DNA from: Histomonas meleagridis 2922-C6/04-290x
Lineage: Eukaryota; Protista; Parabasalia
Assembly (NCBI GenBank): GCA_020184695.1
Contig: JAANOX010000029.1
Coordinates: forward strand, 124,001-188,000
Length of the DNA: 64,000 bases
Direction: 5' to 3'
Shown: positions 5,391 to 55,194 of the stretch, piece after piece
Layout of the letters: every line of letters starts with the position of its first letter
How positions within the stretch are numbered: the stretch's first letter is position 1
Notes under the pieces: generated by a model
Told to the model about the DNA's origin: nothing
Databases searched by the model: none
What the model saw: the letters and a program-made list of their open reading frames with translations, nothing else
Translations under genes and position numbers: made by a program

Positions 5391-5721
5391 TTACATTTAA
5401 CGTATATAAAACCGTTTGTTTTCATTGGTTTATCGAATGTTTACTATTCCTGATTAATATACAAATATTTCTTTAACTTAATCATAATATATATTAAAAC
5501 TGTTTAAATATGATTAAGAAGTTTTATTATAATTTGTTTGATTTATTGTGTTTAATATATGATTTATATGATGAAGATACTTATATTTGTAAAAGTTGGT
5601 GAACAAAAAACTTTTTACAACAAATTTTCAATTGGTCAGGATCAACTTTTTCTGTGTTAATATTCGTGCCGCCTTTTTTTGTTACATAATAAAAATTGCC
5701 AGAATAAATTTTCACTCACAC

Positions 5722-6858
5722 ATGAATTTTTCCCAGCCAATTCCACAGCCAATCTTTTTAAATTCAAACGAAAATACAAACCGCAATTTACCTGTCGATC
5801 AAAATAATTCACCATGGTTAATACCGAATAAACCATCTACCCCACTTCAACATCCAATTGTAAGACGTATTCATCCCATGAGACCTGTTTCTACTTTTGT
5901 TCACACTCCAGGTACTCAAAAAATGAAACCTGTTGCAGCACCTTTTCCAACATTACCATCCAATAAAGAAATTCAAGAACAAAAAGCTAATGTTGAGCAA
6001 GAAATTAAATTTGCTCAAGCAGAGTTATTGTCGCTTCAACACCAACGCGATTTTTATGATAATTCATCCAAAAGATTAATACCCACAACAACAATTAATG
6101 GTATTCGTGAGTATCACAATTTAATTCTTTGTGACTCTGTTATTGATGGTGTTATTTCCGAAAACAAAGAAAAAAAAATCGAATCAGAAAAATTGACCTT
6201 AATAAATACACAAGATACCTCGAAGTATTCGCAAATTATGGATATTCCAACTTACAGACAAAAGACGCGAGAGTATTATGATCTCGTTACCCCACTTTTT
6301 TTTGTCCAAATGCTCAATAAGGAGATTATCGAAGAAAAAAAGCAATCATTAGCACAAATTTACGTTGAGATTCAGAAGAATTGGCTCCGTGGCTCCAAAG
6401 CTATTGACGAATATTCCACTCGTGTTGATGATTGCCATGAAAATTGGCCACCCGAATTTCCAAAAGGTCGAACTAAATCGAACAATTTAGAAGAAGTTAT
6501 GAAGTATACAGCCCCTGACCAACCACAATTTATGACCATGGTTCGAAAACGAACGAATTGTTTTTACAATACAAATGGATTTGTCGAAGATCCAGAAGCT
6601 GCACATAATGAGTTTAAGAATCGAATTTCATGGAGCGAAGAAGAGAAAGAAAAGTTTGTTACGAAGTATATGCAACATCCAAAGAAGTTTCACATCATTG
6701 CGAAACATTTGCCTCTTAAATGCGTGAAAGATGTTATAGAATTTTATTACGTGAGTAGATACACTCTGAGCTTGAAGGAGAAAGAAGGTGTGTACCGAAA
6801 GAGAGGCGGAAGAAGGAAAATTGTTTCTGAAGGGACAACAAGAACAAACAGATACTAA
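5722..6858 (+). CDS. SANT-domain protein, NCoR/Snt1-like corepressor
   Basis: ATG 5722 follows a TCACT Inr. C-terminal WSEEEKEKFVTKYMQHPKKFHIIAKHLPLKCVKDVIEFYY is an NCoR/Snt1 SANT1-type domain. Confidence 0.8.
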   Translation: MNFSQPIPQPIFLNSNENTNRNLPVDQNNSPWLIPNKPSTPLQHPIVRRIHPMRPVSTFVHTPGTQKMKPVAAPFPTLPSNKEIQEQKANVEQEIKFAQAELLSLQHQRDFYDNSSKRLIPTTTINGIREYHNLILCDSVIDGVISENKEKKIESEKLTLINTQDTSKYSQIMDIPTYRQKTREYYDLVTPLFFVQMLNKEIIEEKKQSLAQIYVEIQKNWLRGSKAIDEYSTRVDDCHENWPPEFPKGRTKSNNLEEVMKYTAPDQPQFMTMVRKRTNCFYNTNGFVEDPEAAHNEFKNRISWSEEEKEKFVTKYMQHPKKFHIIAKHLPLKCVKDVIEFYYVSRYTLSLKEKEGVYRKRGGRRKIVSEGTTRTNRY

Positions 6859-7079
6859 AATGTAACATCCATTGAAATAAATTGGTTAAAACACTTTTTC
6901 TGTGCAGGCAAAAACGATTATATCTCAAAGCAAATTTTTGTATGATTTTATGGCCGTTCTGGATCTGGATTTGAATGAAAAATCGTTTTTTCTGACAATT
7001 TATCAATTTACAACAGATGCTGAAGGCTTTCTTCAAGCATTTCAAAATAAAATTCACATGTTTTTTGTGTGCTCTACAT

Positions 7080-9458
7080 ATGATATTTATCCCTAATAGA
7101 AAATTAACAACCACAGAAGATTATATTAACAACAAAAATCAAATTTTCGAATTTAACATTTTCTCAAAAAAATTTGAAAATGATTTTGGATTTTTGAGCG
7201 CTCTTATAGTTGTTACATATATTCTGAGCGTATCAATTCTTTTTAATACAACATTTGTTTTTATATTGAAATTGATTCCAACTTATAATCAAATATTTTT
7301 GTTATGTCTCAAACTTAAATGCAAATTTTTACATTACCTTTTTTCATATTTGAAAGATCTTTTCCAATTTATATCAAATAATTTCAAACTTCATTTGATT
7401 TTAAATTCTATTATTATCGAGAAATTTATTTGTTACATCAAAATAATAGATTCTTATATAATATCTAAATTAAGTGATAGAATCGATAAGAAAGCAAACA
7501 TCAAATTTGTTTTCATATTGTTTATTTTGTTTTTTTCTCATTCGATACAAACTTTTGATACAGATACATCAACATTAACTATAACGGATCCAAATGAATT
7601 TACAAATGATTATCAAAGTAATACAAAATATATTATCATTTCAAGTGGAATAACAGAAATCCCAGATTCCGCTTTTTATGAATGGACATCATTGCTTACA
7701 GCAGAGATTGCAGACTCAGTCACTTCAATTGGATTTTATGCATTTTTTATGTGTTCTAATTTAGAAGAAGTTTCATTTGGAGAAGGTATTACAAGTATTG
7801 GATCAAGTGCATTTCAAAACACTGCATTAAAATATGTAACAATTAAAAGTCCTCTTACAACAGTTGGTGGAGATGTATTTAATGGATGTGATAAACTTGA
7901 AAGTGTAATTTTTTGTGAAAGTGTTCAAACAATTGGATCTATGATGTTTCAAAACTGTATTAATCTTAAAGATGTTACAATTTCAAGTACAATTTCTTCA
8001 ATATCAACAAATCCATTTATTTATTGTACTAGTCTTCAAATTATTAAAATTGCAGAAGATAATTCATATTATAGTAATTATGAAAACGATGGAGTTTTAT
8101 ATGATAAATTGATTACGAAACTCATTATTTATCCTATTGGAAATCTCAGGGAAACATTCAGCATTCCAGATTCAGTCACTTCAATTGAATCAGATGCATT
8201 TAATTTATGTACAAATTTAATAACAATTTCAATTGGGAAAAGTTTAAATACGATAAAAAGTTCTGCATTCTCAAGTTGTGTATTTACGAATTTCATAATT
8301 CCAAACACTGTTATAGATATTCAATCAAGTGCTTTTTCATTCTGTTATGAATTAGAAACGATTATCATTGGCGAAAGTGTTGAAAATATTGGAAATCAAG
8401 CATTTGCGTATTGTACATCACTGAAATGTATTTATTTTTATGGCGAAACTTCACCAGCATTTGGAAGTGATTGTTTTCAAGATGTTCCAACAGAATATGT
8501 TATGGTCAATGAAACATATACAAGTGAAGGATTTGGAGAATTAAAGATAACGAAAGGAACAATTGACGAATGCATTCTTCCAACACTTACATTTACTAAT
8601 TCAAATACATTTACAAATACATTTACAAATACATTCACAAATACATTTACTAAATCCAATACATTTACTAAATCAAATGTTTTCACTAAATCAAATGTTT
8701 TTACTAAATCAAATACATTTACTGAATCAAATGTTTTTACTAAATCAAATGTTTTTACTAAATCATATACATTTACTAAATCAAATACATTTACTAAATC
8801 AAATACATTTTCTATATCAAGTACATATTCTAAATCGAATGCATTTTCTAGGTCAAATACATTTACTAAGTCAAATACATTTACTAAATCAAATACATTT
8901 ACTCAATCAAATATATTTACTAAATCAAATACATTTACAAATTCGAATGTTTTTTCTCTAACAAATACAAATTCGCATTATTCGTCTTTAACGCATTCAT
9001 TCATTTTAACAAATATTATGTCGATTACGATAACAGCTTCTATTTATAAATCATATATTACGAATTCGTTAACTATTTCCCACATCAATTCTTCATTTAC
9101 ATATTCTAATACGAAATTTGTTCATTATGAATACGTCAATATCATTTATTCTACTTATTCCCAAATTTATAGTAATTTCTTCACAATATTAAACTATCAA
9201 AATGATAATGATGAACAAAATCCAATGAAAACAAATGTTCTCATTAGCATTGTATGTTGTACAGTTGTAATTGTTTTTGTAATTATCGGAATTATAATAT
9301 TTTTAATTAAGAAAAAGCACAAAAAGAAAACATATTCAACAACAGATGCACCAACTCATATATCAAACGTATCAATAAATTACGAAGCAGAACAAACAGA
9401 ACATGTCAACAACGAGGTCAAAAGTCTTGTTCAAAAAGATGATGACCAATGGATTTGA
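7080..9458 (+). CDS. BspA-like (TpLRR) type I surface protein, copy 1
   Basis: TpLRR repeats (e.g. IADSVTSIGFYAFFMCSNLEEV), FTKSNT stalk, TM VLISIVCCTVVIVFVIIGIIIFLI, basic stop-transfer, tail ending DDDQWI. First ATG in frame is 7080. Confidence 0.9.
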   Translation: MIFIPNRKLTTTEDYINNKNQIFEFNIFSKKFENDFGFLSALIVVTYILSVSILFNTTFVFILKLIPTYNQIFLLCLKLKCKFLHYLFSYLKDLFQFISNNFKLHLILNSIIIEKFICYIKIIDSYIISKLSDRIDKKANIKFVFILFILFFSHSIQTFDTDTSTLTITDPNEFTNDYQSNTKYIIISSGITEIPDSAFYEWTSLLTAEIADSVTSIGFYAFFMCSNLEEVSFGEGITSIGSSAFQNTALKYVTIKSPLTTVGGDVFNGCDKLESVIFCESVQTIGSMMFQNCINLKDVTISSTISSISTNPFIYCTSLQIIKIAEDNSYYSNYENDGVLYDKLITKLIIYPIGNLRETFSIPDSVTSIESDAFNLCTNLITISIGKSLNTIKSSAFSSCVFTNFIIPNTVIDIQSSAFSFCYELETIIIGESVENIGNQAFAYCTSLKCIYFYGETSPAFGSDCFQDVPTEYVMVNETYTSEGFGELKITKGTIDECILPTLTFTNSNTFTNTFTNTFTNTFTKSNTFTKSNVFTKSNVFTKSNTFTESNVFTKSNVFTKSYTFTKSNTFTKSNTFSISSTYSKSNAFSRSNTFTKSNTFTKSNTFTQSNIFTKSNTFTNSNVFSLTNTNSHYSSLTHSFILTNIMSITITASIYKSYITNSLTISHINSSFTYSNTKFVHYEYVNIIYSTYSQIYSNFFTILNYQNDNDEQNPMKTNVLISIVCCTVVIVFVIIGIIIFLIKKKHKKKTYSTTDAPTHISNVSINYEAEQTEHVNNEVKSLVQKDDDQWI
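8592..8958 (+). repeat. Coding 18-bp (FTKSNT hexapeptide) tandem repeat with 12-bp FTNT units
   Basis: TTTACTAAATCAAATACA-like units; about 18 hexapeptides plus 3 tetrapeptides. Confidence 0.9.
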
Positions 9459-18791: not shown

Positions 18792-20822
18792 ATGATTTAC
18801 CAGATCCTTTTGCTGCAACTCAAATTTTGTTCATGTAATATTTTCGATATGAATGATTTATCGGTGACTGGCTTCAGCCTCTATTCAATAAATATTACAA
18901 AAAATGAACATTTTTCATCAAAATCTTTAATTCATATTAATACCAACAAACCATTAGTATTTCTAATTACACATCAACTAAGTCCTATTATGTCATCTCA
19001 TGTATTAACTCCAGTGAATATTTTATTTCTTAAAAATCAAAAGACAAAAAAAATTTCTCATGTTTTTAATGTCCATTATTTCTTTTCTACAGTGAATAAC
19101 GAATATATATTCAATGTATTTTCTTTTTTATTTAATATTTTTCTAGTAATTTTACTCACTTTTTTTGTCACCAAATTATTTTTCAACAAAATGAAACACA
19201 TATCAATAAATTTATTTGATAAATTAATAAAACATATTAAAACAATAAAAAACAAATTCCTTCCTTTAATATTCATTATTTTTTTCATTCATACAAGTGA
19301 AACATTTTCTACAGAAACATCAACACTTACCATCACTACTTCAAGTGAATTTGATGAAAGATCTTATTACCAAAACATAACGTTAAATCTTATAATTGAA
19401 AGTGGAGTTACAGCAATATCAGATAATGCATTTTCCCATTGGACTTCTTTAGTTTCAGTTATAATTGGTGATTCTGTAACATCGATTGGATATAGTGCAT
19501 TTTTTCGATGTTTAAATTTAGAATCAGTTATAATTGGAGAAAATGTTCAATCATTTGGAAGTCGTGCATTTGAGCAGTGCGGTCAATTACAGAATATCAC
19601 TTTCCCAGCATCAGTAAGTTCATTTGGTAATGCTGTTTTTATATCATGTCCGAATGTTAAGTTTTATAAAGTGTCTGAAAACAATCCGTATTTTTGTAAT
19701 TTAAATGATGATGATGTTCTTTATGATAAAAATGTTAAAACTATTTATTATTATCCAGCAGCTAAAGAAGGAAATACATATAAAATCCCATCAACAGTTA
19801 CTTATATTCGAGATATTTCATTTTATTATTCGAATTTAGAAGAGATTACAAATTGTGATAACATTGAAAGTTTTGGAGAATATGCATTATGCAGATGCAC
19901 TAAACTTAAATCATTTTCAATTTCAAGCAAAGTCACAACAATTTCAGAGGGTTTATTCTCATCATGTACCTGTTTAACCACTGTTTACATTGGAAAAAAT
20001 GTAAATAAAATCGAAATTTTCGCATTTAATTCTTGTAATAGTCTCACATGTGTTTACTTTTATGGTGAAAATGAGCCCACAATTGATGCAAATGCTTTTA
20101 TTTATGTTACAGTTGAAATCATGGTATTAAACACATATCAAAGTAAAACATTTGGTAAATTTGATGTGACATATGAAACAGTTCCAGAGTGCTTTTCAAC
20201 ATATACATTCACTGAATCAAATACATTCACAAATACATTTACTAAATCAAATACATATTCACAATCAAATACATTTTCTAAGTCAAATTCATTTAGTAAG
20301 TCTAATTCATTTATAATAGAGAATTCATTTGAATATTTCACAACATTTTCATATTCATTAACATTGAAATATACGATATCATTTATACAAACAATTTCAA
20401 ATTATTCATTTTTATCAAACACATATATCATTTCAATGTTATCTTCATCTATTACATATTTTGTCACAGAATATTTATATTATAATTATACGATTATTCA
20501 ATATTCGACATATTTAAGTTATTATTCAGATTTCTTTACTATTTTCAATCAAAATGAAGGAAATGATAATGAGAAACAAACGAATACTGTTATTATTATC
20601 ATTATTGTTTGTGTAATAATAGTTATTATTCTAATTATAATAATTGTTGTTATATTTCTTAATCATCAACGAAACAAAACCAAAAATGAAGAAAACGCGA
20701 TAAGTGTTGAAACGAATGACAATAATACGACAGAAGGATTTTCAGTTCCTAATCAAATGTCGAACATTGCTGAAGATCCATTTGTTGAAGATTTCAAAGA
20801 GGATCATTTTGTTAATATATAA
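18792..20822 (+). CDS. BspA-like (TpLRR) type I surface protein, copy 2
   Basis: TpLRR repeats, short FTKSNT stalk, TM VIIIIIVCVIIVIILIIIIVVIFL, tail with DPFVEDFKED. Confidence 0.9.
   Translation: MIYQILLLQLKFCSCNIFDMNDLSVTGFSLYSINITKNEHFSSKSLIHINTNKPLVFLITHQLSPIMSSHVLTPVNILFLKNQKTKKISHVFNVHYFFSTVNNEYIFNVFSFLFNIFLVILLTFFVTKLFFNKMKHISINLFDKLIKHIKTIKNKFLPLIFIIFFIHTSETFSTETSTLTITTSSEFDERSYYQNITLNLIIESGVTAISDNAFSHWTSLVSVIIGDSVTSIGYSAFFRCLNLESVIIGENVQSFGSRAFEQCGQLQNITFPASVSSFGNAVFISCPNVKFYKVSENNPYFCNLNDDDVLYDKNVKTIYYYPAAKEGNTYKIPSTVTYIRDISFYYSNLEEITNCDNIESFGEYALCRCTKLKSFSISSKVTTISEGLFSSCTCLTTVYIGKNVNKIEIFAFNSCNSLTCVYFYGENEPTIDANAFIYVTVEIMVLNTYQSKTFGKFDVTYETVPECFSTYTFTESNTFTNTFTKSNTYSQSNTFSKSNSFSKSNSFIIENSFEYFTTFSYSLTLKYTISFIQTISNYSFLSNTYIISMLSSSITYFVTEYLYYNYTIIQYSTYLSYYSDFFTIFNQNEGNDNEKQTNTVIIIIIVCVIIVIILIIIIVVIFLNHQRNKTKNEENAISVETNDNNTTEGFSVPNQMSNIAEDPFVEDFKEDHFVNI
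20208..20312 (+). repeat. Coding FTKSNT-type repeat (about 5 hexapeptides)
   Basis: FTESNT FTNT FTKSNT YSQSNT FSKSNS FSKSNS. Confidence 0.8.
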
Positions 20823-28413: not shown

Positions 28414-30330
28414 ATGTCCAAATATATTTCTCATTCATACAAAAACATTAAATCAGGTCTATTTCAAGGAAAAAATTTGCCCCATATAGAAGATTTCATG
28501 TTATCCCATGTTAAAAATTTCATAAATTTTCTCTTTTCAAAATATTTGAACATCATACATTTTATTTCTTCTTTCATACAAATAAACATCAATATTCCAC
28601 TATCTTTTAATAAATCAACTCTTTTAACAAACATGTCACACCAAAAAATCATGGATGTTAGATTCTTTGCGAAACAAAACTATTTTTCATTTAATTTTAT
28701 GAACATTTTTGAATATTTCAAGTTAATCTTTTGTATTATCTTTAATTTTTTATATAATAATATTTTAATTCTATTATTTTTTATTAAATTATTTCATTAT
28801 TATTTCAATAAAACGAATAAAAGTTATAAAATTAATTATAAAATTATTTCATTTTTATTTATTCTCTTTTTTATTGAAACTCATGAAACATTTGATTCAG
28901 ATACGCAAACTTTAATTATTAATAATTCTAGTGAATATTCAAATAGAAAAACATATAAAGAACAAGTGAAACATATTATCATTAATGAAGGTATTTCTGA
29001 GATAGAATCTAATGCTTTTTATCAATGGGAAACAATAATTTCAATTAAACTTTATTCATCAATTACAATTATTGGAAGTTCTGCATTTTTATCATGTCGT
29101 AATTTAGTAACAGTTCATCTTAATGAAAATTTAGAAACAATTAATAAATCAGCATTTCGATCATGTTCATCATTAACAAATATTATTATTCCAAATTCAG
29201 TTACAACGATTGGATCTTATGGATTTGAATCATGTTCCGATTTAATTACTATTAATATATCAGAAAATTTAGTACGAATTTGTGATTATACATTTCAATA
29301 TTGTTCATCATTAACAAATATTACAATTCCAAATTCAGTTACAACGATTGGAAGTTCTGCATTTTTATCATGTAGTAATTTAGTCACAGTTATTATTGGC
29401 GAAAATGTAACAACGATTGGGGATAATGCATTTTGTTCATGTCAAAAACTTAACTGTATTTATTACGAAGGTATTACATCACCAACATACATAAGTTCAA
29501 ATGCATTTTCTGATATTTTAACGAAATATGTTATGACATCATATTTATATCAAAACGCGACATTTGGAACTCTTAATGTTTCACATAAAATGCTTTCAGA
29601 ATGTGATATATATTTATGGTCAACACTTACATTTACTAGAAGTGATACATTTTCAAATACATTTACTCAATCAAATACATTTACAGGAAGTAATACATAT
29701 TCAAATACATTTACAGGAAGTAATACATTTACTCAATCCAACACATTTACCAATTCAAACAAATTTACTAAATCCAATACATTAACTCAATCTAATACAT
29801 TCACTAATTCAAATATATTTACTAATTCAAATATATTTACTCAATCCAATGAATTTACAAATTCGTTATTTCCAAGTATTTCAATTTCATTTTCATTAAT
29901 TAATTTTTATTCTGTTACGCAAACATTTATTGTTAACACATACTTATCGAACACATTAATAAATACATATATTGAAACAAGTTATACCTTTACGCATTCA
30001 CAAGTCATCTATTATAATTATACAATTTATCAATACACTTCACAGTATAATATTTACACCAGATTTTACACAATTATTGTGGAAAGCGAGATCAATAATG
30101 CAAAAACTATTCCAACAAATGTATTAATTGGTATAATATGCGGTGCAATTATAATTGTTCTTTTGATTATTGGAATTGTTGTTTTTGTTGTTAAAAAAGC
30201 TAATAATCAAAATTTAGTTACAAAATCAGGAAAATCTTTTTCATCAAATGATGATAATAAAGATCAAACTGAATACGTTGGCGGTGATTTCAAAGAATAT
30301 ATTGATAAAGATAATGATCAATGGATATAA
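28414..30330 (+). CDS. BspA-like (TpLRR) type I surface protein, copy 3
   Basis: TpLRR repeats (IPNSVTTIGSYGFESCSDL), FTQSNT stalk, TM VLIGIICGAIIIVLLIIGIVVFVV, tail ending DNDQWI. Confidence 0.9.
   Translation: MSKYISHSYKNIKSGLFQGKNLPHIEDFMLSHVKNFINFLFSKYLNIIHFISSFIQININIPLSFNKSTLLTNMSHQKIMDVRFFAKQNYFSFNFMNIFEYFKLIFCIIFNFLYNNILILLFFIKLFHYYFNKTNKSYKINYKIISFLFILFFIETHETFDSDTQTLIINNSSEYSNRKTYKEQVKHIIINEGISEIESNAFYQWETIISIKLYSSITIIGSSAFLSCRNLVTVHLNENLETINKSAFRSCSSLTNIIIPNSVTTIGSYGFESCSDLITINISENLVRICDYTFQYCSSLTNITIPNSVTTIGSSAFLSCSNLVTVIIGENVTTIGDNAFCSCQKLNCIYYEGITSPTYISSNAFSDILTKYVMTSYLYQNATFGTLNVSHKMLSECDIYLWSTLTFTRSDTFSNTFTQSNTFTGSNTYSNTFTGSNTFTQSNTFTNSNKFTKSNTLTQSNTFTNSNIFTNSNIFTQSNEFTNSLFPSISISFSLINFYSVTQTFIVNTYLSNTLINTYIETSYTFTHSQVIYYNYTIYQYTSQYNIYTRFYTIIVESEINNAKTIPTNVLIGIICGAIIIVLLIIGIVVFVVKKANNQNLVTKSGKSFSSNDDNKDQTEYVGGDFKEYIDKDNDQWI
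29632..29865 (+). repeat. Coding FTxSNT repeat (about 11 hexapeptides plus 2 tetrapeptides)
   Basis: FTRSDT FSNT FTQSNT FTGSNT YSNT ... FTQSNE. Confidence 0.85.
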
Positions 30331-53601: not shown

Positions 53602-54969
53602 GTTGATATTTGCTGCATTTTTTATAATGTAAAATTGTTTTTTAATAAATTTTGTTCTAATTTTTATTGTATATTTAGATCTGAATATGAATTTCATATG
53701 TTCAATTATTAAATCCGCAAAGAATAAAAATCGAATTGGATATGAAATATGTGATACACAACTTGCACAGGTAGAAATTCTATTCCTAGAGGAACAAAAA
53801 ATGGCTATAAAATGATACAGATGTGTATAAAATAACCTTCTCATGTCAAATATGGTTCGAATTAATTTTTATTAAAATCGATTTTTATTGAATATTAAAA
53901 AGAAATCTTAATATCTAAACATGTAAAAATATAAACTACAAATTCATGATAATCATATATATAAATTATAATAAAAAATTCAAAGTATATAACAAGTTAT
54001 AGAATAAAATATTTAAAATTTAACTCTTTTTTATTTCGTTGAATAATTAATATTTGAATTTTTTTCCAAGTTTATTAAATTGCTAGTTAATAATATAATT
54101 TATATTATTTTCGTTAAGCTTTTGATTAAATTTTCAAATGACATTTTTTTTAGTCAGTTTTTATAAAAACATTTTCATTTTTTTTCAAGTATCACAGAAT
54201 ATCGAAACTAAAGTTTTTTTCTCAGTAAGAAACTTATTTTTATCTTCTTTGTTTTGTTTTAAAATCCAAAAAATGGATTATAAATACCAAAAAGGTAAAT
54301 TCATTTATATATAATATAAAATCTTATATACACCTCCAATAATGATTTAGGAAATGGATATATATGATATGGGTATATTCAAATGGAATACTTAATAGTA
54401 AGCTCTTTCAATGCCAAACACTAAAGAGTACCCTAAACAAACCAGGAACATTTCCATGGAAACCCTGAAATTCTAAAAATATGGCAAGCATGCTTTTTTT
54501 GCAAATGGCAGCACATTTTTTAAAAAAGTAACACTCTATCGGAGCGGTTATTATCGTAATCACAAAAAGTTGTTTTCATATAAAAGTGACTTTTTTGCAT
54601 TCTTCTCTTAAAACATAATAAAGTTAATGTTTCATTTGATTTTTGAAATTCCTTTATGCCACATTTTGATCATTTTTCATTTAAAAATCTGTTAAGATAT
54701 CATCTTCTTTCTTTCAGTTTTTTGTCTGCTTCGACAATTTAAATGAGGGAACTATCTGTCACTTTTCATTAAAACATTGCGTTTCGAATTTGTAAGCTTA
54801 TTTACCATTTTAACTGAATATTAACTTCATGAAGAAAATGTTCGAATTCAATGAAACTGTTCAAATTCTAATGCGTTACTTTTTTATTTTGGGATTTTTT
54901 ATATTTTATGAAATCAAATTAAATATTTAATTAATAAATTGAAAACAAACGAAAAGAAAAAACAGAAAA

Positions 54970-55194
54970 ATGTTTTAATTTTTCATAAATTCTTTTCAAA
55001 TATTTTATAATGATAATTTTACATTAATAATAACAAATAAAAATGATTTTGATGATATTGAACAATATCAAAATAAAACGAAATTTATAAATATTTGTGA
55101 AGGAATTTAATTAATTCCAAATAATGCATTTTCATCATGGTCAACAGTTATTTCCGTGAATTTTGGTGATTCTATATCATCTATTGGAAGTTAT
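54970..55194 (+). pseudogene. BspA-like pseudogene (5' fragment)
   Basis: MF*FFINSFQIFYNDNFTLIITNKNDF...KFINICEGI*LIPNNAFSSWSTVISVNFGDSISSIGSY, with TAA at 54976 and 55108. It aligns by eye to the first LRR of the three intact BspA genes. Confidence 0.75.

What the first reader, a model, noticed from the sequence alone, without database searches (positions are those of the whole stretch)
7080..7560. Three BspA paralogs carry a ~160-codon stop-free leader of conserved length and layout
Upstream of the shared motif F[IL][LIF]FF..[ST].[EQ]TF...T.TL.I, which looks like a signal h-region plus cleavage site, each intact BspA has an open frame from its first ATG of 157 (7080), 170 (18792) and 158 (28414) codons. 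The leaders barely align in sequence. At least copies 2 and 3 show a long hydrophobic helix, then an N/K-rich basic loop, then the short h-region; copy 1 has extra hydrophobic segments. Copy 1 has no ATG closer than 157 codons. Staying stop-free in very AT-rich DNA at three loci, with similar lengths, suggests selection. This could be an uncharacterised long or internal signal, a membrane-hairpin targeting domain, or a leader processed away (non-AUG start or unusual splicing). The pseudogene at 54970 has its ATG right at the h-region, so a leaderless form also existed.
Basis: partly seen in the sequence, partly recalled or inferred. Interest (0 to 1): 0.75.

Follow-up and report, generated by a model that had tools for sequence, protein, structure and literature searches.

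The report
Long translated leaders on Histomonas BspA
Most BspA surface-protein genes of the poultry parasite Histomonas meleagridis encode a long extra N-terminal stretch, ending in a membrane helix and a lysine-rich loop, ahead of their signal-peptide-like segment, so the secretion signal lies deep inside the protein rather than at its start.

Summary
The genome is the attenuated Histomonas meleagridis assembly. Each of the three window leaders is stop-free, with chance probability 3e-6 to 5e-5, while the other two frames carry 8-18 stops. Across 68 sampled BspA loci the in-frame open run upstream of the h-region has a median of 152 codons, against 8 and 3 in the other frames. Indels between paralogous leaders are multiples of three. 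The open run begins about 8 codons before an ATG. RNA-like contigs from four runs cover copy 1's leader without a splice. The leader is therefore coding sequence.

Its length is not conserved (29-227 codons per leader family). The layout is:
- a fast-evolving N-terminal part that looks non-coding
- a hydrophobic helix 20-36 residues before the h-region
- a loop with net charge about +5
- a 10-11 residue h-region followed by a small residue that fits the -3/-1 signal-peptidase rule

Metagenomic relatives share this layout and start with a clear N-terminal signal peptide. The best reading is a recessed internal signal behind a membrane hairpin; topology and cleavage are inferred. The "leaderless" pseudogene at 54970 actually carries a decayed leader. 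First-stage readers of this scan noted the same pattern on other pieces of this genome.

The parts
7017..9458 (+). BspA copy 1, full ORF (813 aa counted from ATG 7017; second in-frame ATG at 7080; upstream in-frame TGA at 6993)
7017..7505 (+). Copy 1 leader: 163 codons from ATG 7017, or 142 from ATG 7080. Stop-free. The paralog on C245 conserves ATG 7017 but not 7080.
7047..7789 (+). Longest RNA-like contig (run X1). It begins between the two ATGs and runs unbroken through the leader, the h-region and into the LRRs. Run X4 has a contig starting at 7051. Runs X2 and X3 have contigs that cross 7500-7560.
   Evidence: table 8. Contig 5' ends are imprecise by about 50-70 nt.
7182..7280 (+). Copy 1's strongest leader hydrophobic segment (DFGFLSALIVVTYILSVSILFNTTFVFILKLIP). 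Poorly conserved in the paralog.
7398..7448 (+). Copy 1 TM1-equivalent helix (ILNSIIIEKFICYIKII). Weaker and more amphipathic than in most family members.
7464..7505 (+). Copy 1 basic loop (SKLSDRIDKKANIK)
7506..7544 (+). Copy 1 h-region FVFILFILFF plus c-region SHS. Predicted signal-peptidase site between 7544 and 7545 (SHS|IQTF).
18792..20822 (+). BspA copy 2, full ORF (676 aa)
18792..19103 (+). Copy 2 N-terminal part of the leader. Poorly conserved, with large indels among paralogs. AlphaFold pLDDT below 33.
19104..19187 (+). Copy 2 TM1 helix (YIFNVFSFLFNIFLVILLTFFVTKLFFN)
19188..19256 (+). Copy 2 basic loop (net charge +7). Contains the internal ATG at 19191.
19257..19295 (+). Copy 2 h-region FLPLIFIIFFI plus c-region HT. 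Predicted cleavage HT|SETF.
28414..30330 (+). BspA copy 3, full ORF (638 aa). TCATA initiator-like motif 15 nt upstream of the ATG.
28723..28806 (+). Copy 3 TM1 helix (LIFCIIFNFLYNNILILLFFIKLFHYYF)
28807..28842 (+). Copy 3 basic loop (NKTNKSYKINYK)
28843..28881 (+). Copy 3 h-region IISFLFILFFI plus c-region ET. Predicted cleavage ET|HETF.
54794..55023 (+). BspA pseudogene: decayed '175-type' leader (TM1 plus loop remnants with stops), not a leaderless form

Best explanation
The leaders are real coding sequence, the N-terminal part of the BspA precursor.

Translation starts at the first ATG(s) of the long ORF. The precursor reads, in order:
- a variable, fast-evolving N-terminal region of 0 to about 170 residues, often with a hydrophobic, signal-like start
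- a transmembrane helix (TM1)
- a lysine-rich loop of about 12-40 residues
- a short h-region of 10-11 residues with a small residue at the -1 position
- the LRR ectodomain, the FTKSNT stalk, a C-terminal TM and a tail

By the positive-inside rule the loop is cytosolic. TM1 would then run from outside to inside. The h-region would act as a recessed (internal) signal that restarts translocation of the LRR domain. Signal peptidase probably cuts after it, leaving the leader behind as a membrane hairpin.

Shown here: the frame is kept open by selection, the leader is transcribed in copy 1, the layout is conserved, and related organisms share it. Inferred: where translation starts (7017 or 7080 in copy 1), the topology, the cleavage, and any function for the N-terminal part.
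For: Open frame in the window: chance P 3e-6 to 5e-5 per leader, with 8-18 stops in the other frames.

Open frame across the family: 68 loci have a median of 152 open codons in frame, against 8 and 3 out of frame. 55 of 68 reach 80 codons, against 0 of 68 reaching 50 in the other frames.

Divergence keeps the frame:
- 18 of 20 internal indels between paralogous leaders are multiples of 3.
- Neutral simulation predicts 2.5-6 new stops per diverged pair. None is seen (P 0.002-0.07 per pair).

Start of the open run: it begins a median of 8-9 codons before an in-frame ATG, although the Met density would predict about 38.

RNA: in four runs that behave like RNA, contigs cover copy 1's leader and cross into the LRRs with no joint. 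These runs show zero depth in the intergenic bin and very large depth differences between neighbouring genes. The earliest contig starts are at 7047 and 7051.

Layout:
- A hydropathy peak lies at -36 to -20 from the h-region (KD 1.5-1.7 against about 0.1).
- TM1 is present in 24 of 25 representatives.
- Net charge is +0.4 before TM1 and +4.9 in the loop.
- The TM1 zone scores 2.24 against 0.98 for the adjacent zone, P 8e-5.
- T at codon position 2 is 0.59 in TM1, a sign of selection at the amino-acid level.

Conservation gradient: N-terminal part 0.21, TM1 plus loop 0.43, mature part 0.63.

Cleavage motif: the residue after the h-region is small in 65 of 65 sequences.

Short and leaderless forms:
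- Short-leader members still keep TM1 (L072, L051).
- A few leaderless members use the same element as an ordinary N-terminal signal peptide (L048).

Cross-species: only 25 of 1.84 billion library proteins match the TM1-loop-h-region profile. Several carry 140-180 residues before the matched TM1-loop-h-region segment. They start with a clear signal peptide (for example MKIPHLSLALLIVFALLPSVTC). Their N-modules align at 25-41% identity over about 165 residues. They sit on eukaryotic contigs of 34-38% GC whose leaders are also stop-free.
Against: The N-terminal part of the Histomonas leaders has flat codon-position composition like non-coding DNA, apart from stop avoidance.

dN/dS is about 0.5-1.0 and does not differ from the body of the gene.

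AlphaFold gives that part no fold.

Leader length varies eightfold.

Many members have an ATG 2-12 codons before the h-region that would give a classical signal peptide.

In yeast, N-terminal extensions reduce signal-peptidase cleavage (PMC8277137), so cleavage is uncertain.

RNA evidence exists for copy 1 only. It comes from assembled contigs of runs whose RNA label is a guess, and contig ends are imprecise by 50-70 nt.

There is no protein-level evidence.
Confidence: 0.6

Rival explanations
1. The leader is translated but inert. The mRNA happens to start far upstream, so the first in-frame AUG is used. Any stop or frameshift would abolish BspA expression. Selection therefore keeps the frame open without caring about the peptide.
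For: The N-terminal part of the leaders has non-coding-like composition with only stop avoidance. dN/dS is near 0.8. Leader families are unrelated and lengths run from 29 to 227 codons. The N-terminal part has no predicted fold. Leaderless classical-signal forms exist.
Against: It does not explain several results:
- A hydrophobic helix and a +5 loop sit at a fixed distance from the h-region in 24 of 25 unrelated leaders.
- T is enriched at codon position 2 in TM1.
- TM1 plus loop is twice as conserved as the N-terminal part.
- Related organisms keep a homologous N-module with a proper signal peptide.
- More than 80% of sampled genes would need distant transcription starts.
Confidence: 0.2
2. 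Two isoforms. Genes with an ATG close to the h-region (copy 2 at 19191, copy 3 at 28699, and many paralogs 2-12 codons upstream) also use an internal transcription or translation start. The cell would then make both a classical signal-peptide form and a leader-bearing form.
For: Proximal in-frame ATGs are frequent. The loop DNA is A-rich, like regions upstream of start codons in this genome. Leaderless members show that the h-region can work from the N-terminus. Depth of the contig covering the leader is somewhat lower than that of contigs on the body of the gene.
Against: Copy 1 and several paralogs (L021, L023, L033, L045) have no proximal ATG. An initiator-motif scan gave no enrichment at proximal ATGs. 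Contig depth cannot rank parts of a gene, and paralogous LRRs inflate it. With an upstream start, many AUGs in all frames lie before the proximal one.
Confidence: 0.12
3. The leader is not translated. It would be a 5' UTR or an intron, with translation starting at a proximal or non-AUG codon, and the open frame due to chance or base composition.
For: The composition of the N-terminal part resembles non-coding DNA. The classical signal layout begins only at the loop.
Against: Openness is far beyond chance both in the window and genome-wide. Indels are multiples of three and stops are avoided during divergence. The open run begins at an ATG. The RNA shows no splice joint in the leader. Introns are scarce in this genome (PMC8529796).
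Confidence: 0.03

Closest known systems
Trichomonad BspA-like surface proteins (TvBspA with C-terminal TM and cytoplasmic tail; Noel et al. 2010, PMC2843621; Handrich et al. 2019, PMC6701047)
   Same: LRR_5/TpLRR ectodomain, a C-terminal TM with a short tail, and a large multigene family. Signal peptides are often 'missing' from the N-terminus: only 35 of 193 TMD forms in T. vaginalis have a predicted one.
   Different: No long leader with TM1, basic loop and recessed h-region has been described for them. The profile of this module found only 25 proteins in 1.84 billion. None was checked for a T. vaginalis origin, and I did not confirm that T. vaginalis proteins are in that library.
Recessed signal sequences of Plasmodium exported proteins (PMC10900883)
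   Same: The ER-entry hydrophobic segment sits tens of residues from the N-terminus in a protist surface or exported protein family. Classical and recessed forms coexist within families.
   Different: The Plasmodium recess is usually under 80 residues, has no preceding TM helix, and is processed at a PEXEL motif by plasmepsin V. Here the recess reaches about 230 residues, a TM helix and a basic loop precede it, and the site fits the -3/-1 signal-peptidase rule.
Long signal peptides with two-domain 'NtraC' organisation (Hiss et al. 2008, PMC2447879); from my own knowledge also foamy-virus Env leader peptide and the arenavirus stable signal peptide
   Same: A leader with an N-terminal domain, a transition and a C-terminal signal domain on single-pass membrane proteins. 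The arenavirus SSP has two hydrophobic segments separated by a basic residue and is cut by signal peptidase.
   Different: Those leaders are 40-150 residues long and conserved in sequence. Here the N-terminal part evolves almost freely and differs between paralogs. Neither retention nor any function of the cut leader has been tested.
Polytopic membrane proteins whose internal signal-anchor and stop-transfer segments alternate
   Same: Alternating hydrophobic segments with a positively charged cytosolic loop.
   Different: The last hydrophobic segment before the ectodomain has only 10-11 residues and is followed by a small residue. That is typical of a cleavable signal rather than a stable span.

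Membership tests
BspA-like LRR proteins (Pfam PF13306 LRR_5) | LRR_5 repeats above the Pfam gathering score | tested here: met
   198, 128 and 233 bits against a cut-off of 27.7
BspA-like LRR proteins, trichomonad TMD-CCT type | C-terminal TM helix followed by a short cytoplasmic tail | tested here: met
   Hydrophobic segments at aa 738-767, 595-627 and 565-597, each followed by a charged tail
Classical cleavable N-terminal signal peptide | Hydrophobic core within about the first 30 residues of the translated protein | tested here: not met
   The h-region starts at residue 164, 156 and 144 of the ORFs. It is at the N-terminus only in a minority of leaderless paralogs.
Classical cleavable N-terminal signal peptide | Positively charged n-region, a 7-15 residue h-region, and small residues at -1 (and -3) | tested here: met
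   K/R fraction 0.2-0.4 in the 12 residues before the h-region. The h-region is 10-11 residues. The -1 position is S/T/A/C/G in 65 of 65, and -3 is I/M/S/T/A.
Classical cleavable N-terminal signal peptide | Actual cleavage by signal peptidase | not testable with these tools
   Needs N-terminal sequencing or N-terminomics
Recessed signal sequence (Plasmodium PEXEL type) | PEXEL motif RxLxE/Q/D downstream of the hydrophobic segment | tested here: not met
   The sequence after the h-region is [ST]x[QE]TFD..T.TLTI. No RxLxE motif was seen.
Long signal peptide, NtraC organisation | Leader of at least 40 residues with an N-domain, a turn or transition, and a C-domain that carries the signal function | tested here: inconclusive
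   The layout is comparable, but the leader contains a full TM helix and function was not tested
Coding sequence, as opposed to 5' UTR | Frame kept open beyond chance, indels in multiples of three, open run starting at an ATG, and presence in mRNA | tested here: met
   mRNA evidence is for copy 1 only.
Coding sequence, as opposed to 5' UTR | Period-3 codon composition and dN/dS clearly below 1 | tested here: inconclusive
   TM1 shows T enrichment at codon position 2. The N-terminal part is flat. dN/dS is 0.5-1.0, the same as the LRR body.

The most novel reading that the evidence does not exclude
The leader is a functional second module of a bipartite surface protein. In this reading an N-terminal signal peptide puts a hypervariable N-module outside the cell, TM1 and the h-region form a hairpin with a cytosolic lysine-rich loop, and signal-peptidase cleavage (or its regulated absence) decides the outcome. 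The BspA ectodomain would either stay double-anchored or be separated from a stable 'leader protein'. The unrelated, fast-changing leaders would then be a separate layer of surface variation or a trafficking control. The same logic could explain why so many trichomonad BspA proteins seem to lack signal peptides.
Probability: 0.2. Interest if true: 0.8.

Novelty: new variant of a known kind. Interest (0 to 1): 0.6.

Why it matters
BspA-like proteins are the main candidate adhesins and surface antigens of Histomonas and other trichomonads. How they reach the surface has been unclear, because most lack a detectable N-terminal signal peptide (PMC2843621, PMC6701047).

Three consequences follow if the signal in Histomonas lies 40-230 residues inside the precursor, behind a membrane helix:
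- Signal-peptide and topology predictions for this family would be systematically wrong.
- Published gene models and family counts need revisiting. The genome paper lists 94 BspA proteins, while at least 159 loci match the N-terminal module here.
- The true mature N-terminus and any exposed leader domain matter for choosing vaccine or diagnostic antigens.

It is also an unusually clear case of a translated region whose N-terminal part is constrained almost only to stay open.

Tried and rejected
Searches that gave nothing useful:
- Word-based protein search with copy 1's leader and with copy 2's h-region plus N-cap: no hits.
- The same search over the LRR region: swamped by bacterial LRR proteins. 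One apparent Histomonas hit (P0039) proved to be a bacterial lipoprotein.
- Exact-protein look-ups for copies 2 and 3 in public assemblies: nothing.
The survey rests on 70 loci.

Tests without power:
- Initiator-motif (TCAYW) scan upstream of first and proximal ATGs. It found 10 of 37 and 9 of 32. By my own rough estimates the chance rate is about 20% and about 7 of 20 ordinary genes carry the motif, so the test has no power.
- Nei-Gojobori dN/dS. Leader and LRR body both give 0.5-1.0, so it does not discriminate.
- Profile-profile comparison of the metagenomic N-modules with the Histomonas '175-type' and '207-type' leaders. Only a weak match over TM1-loop-h-region appeared (E 0.008, probability 5%). 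There is no evidence that the N-modules are homologous across species.

Readings considered and rejected:
- An antisense gene as the cause of the open frame. No ORF of 150 aa or more lies opposite the leaders.
- T-rich promoter DNA as the cause of 'TM1'. The T excess is strongest at codon position 2.
- The two contig joints (8448>8874, 8911>9438) as introns. They lie in the FTKSNT repeat region, not in the leader, and look like repeat collapse.
Full report
**Identity of the genome.** The window is contig C29:124001-188000 of a 43,133,364-bp assembly in 281 contigs. Its largest contig is 1,157,039 bp. These figures equal those of the attenuated Histomonas meleagridis strain in Table 1 of Palmieri et al. 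2021 (PMC8529796). That paper gives 28% GC, scarce introns, and 94 annotated BspA-motif proteins. It does not discuss leaders.

**The observation.**
- ORFs 7017-9458, 18792-20822 and 28414-30330 are BspA-type LRR proteins (PF13306). Each has a Thr/Ser/Asn-rich FTKSNT stalk, a C-terminal TM and a tail.
- All three share the motif F[IL][LIF]FF..[ST].[EQ]TF...T.TL.I.
- The stretches upstream of the motif are stop-free for 161, 155 and 144 codons. The other two frames of the same DNA hold 8-18 stops. A first-order Markov model of each leader gives P(open) of 3e-6 to 5e-5.
- In-frame stops lie 7, 1 and 8 codons upstream of the first ATGs.

**Is it more than chance across the genome?**
- A profile of the h-region plus the first LRRs (A1) finds at least 159 loci in this genome. 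I fetched 70 of them.
- In the 68 loci where the h-region is present, the in-frame open run upstream of it has a median of 152 codons. The other two frames, measured from the same point, give 8 and 3.
- 55 of 68 loci have at least 80 open codons in frame. None of 68 reaches 50 in the other frames.
- The leaders fall into at least 20 clusters with no detectable similarity to each other, so this is not one recent duplication.

**Signs that the leader is translated.**
- Between paralogous leaders, 18 of 20 internal indels are multiples of three. The two exceptions sum to 63 in a poor alignment.
- Applying the observed number and kind of substitutions at random would add 2.5-6 stops per diverged pair. 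None is present (P 0.002-0.07 per pair).
- The open run begins a median of 8-9 codons before an in-frame ATG. The Met density inside leaders (0.026) would put the first ATG about 38 codons in. The stop-free constraint therefore starts at an ATG, as in an ordinary gene.

**RNA evidence for copy 1.**
- Four runs from one study hold the locus. Their RNA label is a guess, but they behave like RNA. All four have zero depth in the intergenic bin 5401-5600. Depth differs by up to about 200-fold between neighbouring genes, and contigs break between genes.
- Run X1 has a 743-nt contig spanning 7047-7789. Run X4 has one starting at 7051. In all four runs a contig crosses the boundary between the leader and the h-region. 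No joint lies in the leader.
- As a calibration, contig starts for the neighbouring gene (ATG at 5722) scatter from 5651 to 5777. The 5' end is therefore good only to about 50-70 nt.
- I cannot decide between ATG 7017 and ATG 7080. The paralog on C245 conserves 7017 (MLKAFF / MLQAFI) but not 7080.

**What is and is not conserved.**
- Length is not conserved: 29 to 227 codons across leader clusters.
- Layout is conserved. Aligned on the h-region, mean hydropathy peaks at -36 to -20 (KD 1.5-1.7 against about 0.1 further upstream). K/R frequency rises to 0.2-0.4 in the last 12 residues. The h-region itself is 10-11 residues.
- A 17-residue window with KD of at least 1.6 is present in 24 of 25 representatives. 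Net charge is +0.4 in the 15 residues before it and +4.9 in the loop, whose mean length is 24 (Wilcoxon P 1e-5).
- The TM1 zone is more hydrophobic than the adjacent upstream zone: 2.24 against 0.98, P 8e-5. Copy 1 and L049 are exceptions, with their strongest segment further upstream.
- In the TM1 zone T is 0.42, 0.59 and 0.49 at codon positions 1, 2 and 3, and A at position 2 drops to 0.25. This points to selection for hydrophobic residues rather than a T-rich DNA signal.
- The N-terminal part has flat composition like the DNA upstream of the ORF, apart from depletion of G2 and A3, which is stop avoidance. The LRR body has strong period-3 composition.
- Identity between related genes rises from 0.21 (N-terminal part) to 0.43 (TM1 plus loop) to 0.63 (h-region plus mature part). 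The copy 2 cluster shows the same gradient.
- AlphaFold2 on copy 2 (a shallow alignment) gives pLDDT below 33 for residues 1-105 and helices at 103-134, 139-150 and 157-167. The LRR part is confident.
- Members with short leaders still begin at or just before TM1 (L072 with 42 residues, L051 with 51).

**The h-region as a signal.**
- In 65 aligned sequences the third residue after the FF pair is S, T, A, C or G in every case. The residue two positions before it is I, M, S, T or A. This fits the -3/-1 rule.
- Predicted cuts are SHS|IQTF, HT|SETF and ET|HETF.
- About 10 of 68 loci have short open runs. Several are decayed leaders with stops. A few have an ATG directly before the same element (L048: MLTK-FASVIFLLFF-SHA), so it can also act as an ordinary N-terminal signal peptide.
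- The window's pseudogene is of the decayed kind. 54794-55023 matches nucleotides 359-594 of a '175-type' leader at 80% identity, with stops.

**Relatives elsewhere.**
- A profile of TM1, loop, h-region and N-cap (A3) found only 25 proteins at E of 0.001 or better among 1.84 billion. The best is 5e-13.
- They come from short ENA metagenome contigs. One contig also carries a eukaryotic-looking gene. The other carries a FTQSNT stalk, a TM and a tail. GC is 34-38%, and the leaders are again stop-free, with 9-15 stops in the other frames.
- In several the match begins 140-180 residues into the protein.
- Seven of eight examined start with a hydrophobic, signal-peptide-like N-terminus.
- The N-modules of P0121-P0124 and P0137 align with each other at 25-41% identity over about 165 residues. 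They share Cys residues and an N-x-T site.
- These N-modules are not detectably homologous to the Histomonas leaders.
- In Histomonas, hydrophobic N-terminal starts are only mildly enriched (1.35 against 0.81, P 0.01).

**Mechanism.**
- Shown: the leader is coding, it is transcribed in copy 1, and it ends in a conserved helix, basic loop and short h-region.
- Inferred from the positive-inside rule: the loop is cytosolic. The region before TM1 would then be luminal or extracellular, which agrees with the signal peptide at the start of the relatives' N-modules. The h-region restarts translocation of the LRR domain.
- Cleavage after the h-region is plausible because the core is short and the -1 residue is small. 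It is uncertain because N-terminal extensions lower cleavage in yeast (PMC8277137).
- The N-terminal part in Histomonas may have little function of its own beyond staying open.

**Comparison with what is known.**
- Recessed signals are known in Plasmodium (PMC10900883) and long two-domain signal peptides in vertebrates (PMC2447879). From my own knowledge, the arenavirus stable signal peptide and the foamy-virus Env leader are hairpin or long leaders.
- The papers I read on trichomonad BspA proteins note only that signal peptides are mostly undetectable. None describes this architecture.
- I rate it a new variant of a known kind.
- First-stage notes of this scan flagged the same pattern on other pieces of this genome. 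No follow-up results were available.

Noticed in passing
whole genome G000: At least 159 loci match the BspA h-region plus first-LRR profile at E of 1e-5 or better, with 4310 first-look candidates. The genome paper lists 94 BspA-motif proteins, so the family looks under-annotated.
   Followed up: partly
window 7017-7770 versus L023 (G000:C245:311386-314787): Copy 1 and its paralog are about 97% identical in the h-region and first 90 mature residues but only 61% identical in the leader. This suggests mosaic evolution: either gene conversion of the LRR/N-cap or much faster leader divergence. In the 207-type family the pattern is reversed, with the leader more alike than the body.
   Followed up: partly
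L088 (ENA ERZ28614817, scaffold_28905) and L089 (ERZ28614869, scaffold_23898): Metagenome contigs of an unidentified eukaryote (34-38% GC) carry BspA genes with the same leader layout, FTQSNT stalk repeats, TM and tail. Probably a relative of Histomonas. The host or sample type is not known to me.
   Followed up: partly
window 9420-9458 and 30292-30330: The cytoplasmic tails of copies 1 and 3 both end in D-[DN]-D-Q-W-I. This shared C-terminal motif could be a sorting signal. Copy 2 ends differently (HFVNI).
   Followed up: no
window 8448-9438: RNA-like contigs show two 'joints' (8448>8874 and 8911>9438) inside the FTKSNT repeat region of copy 1. They are most likely assembly collapse across repeats or length-variant paralogs, not introns.
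   Followed up: no
window 5722-6858: The upstream neighbour is well expressed in all four runs (depth about 90-180). Its long ORF starts at TTG in the mechanical ORF list, but the first ATG is at 5722, with a TCACT initiator-like motif 10 nt upstream (its central A 8 nt from the ATG).
   Followed up: no
L050, L054, L055, L064, L067, L073, L078, L079, L086 (nine contigs): A '175-type' leader of exactly 175 codons recurs on at least nine loci at 74-96% identity. It has a conserved first ATG 8 codons after a stop and an ATG 12 codons before the h-region. A '207-type' leader family (L070, L080-L085, L087) starts with MRIFLLFSI, which looks like a signal peptide.
   Followed up: partly
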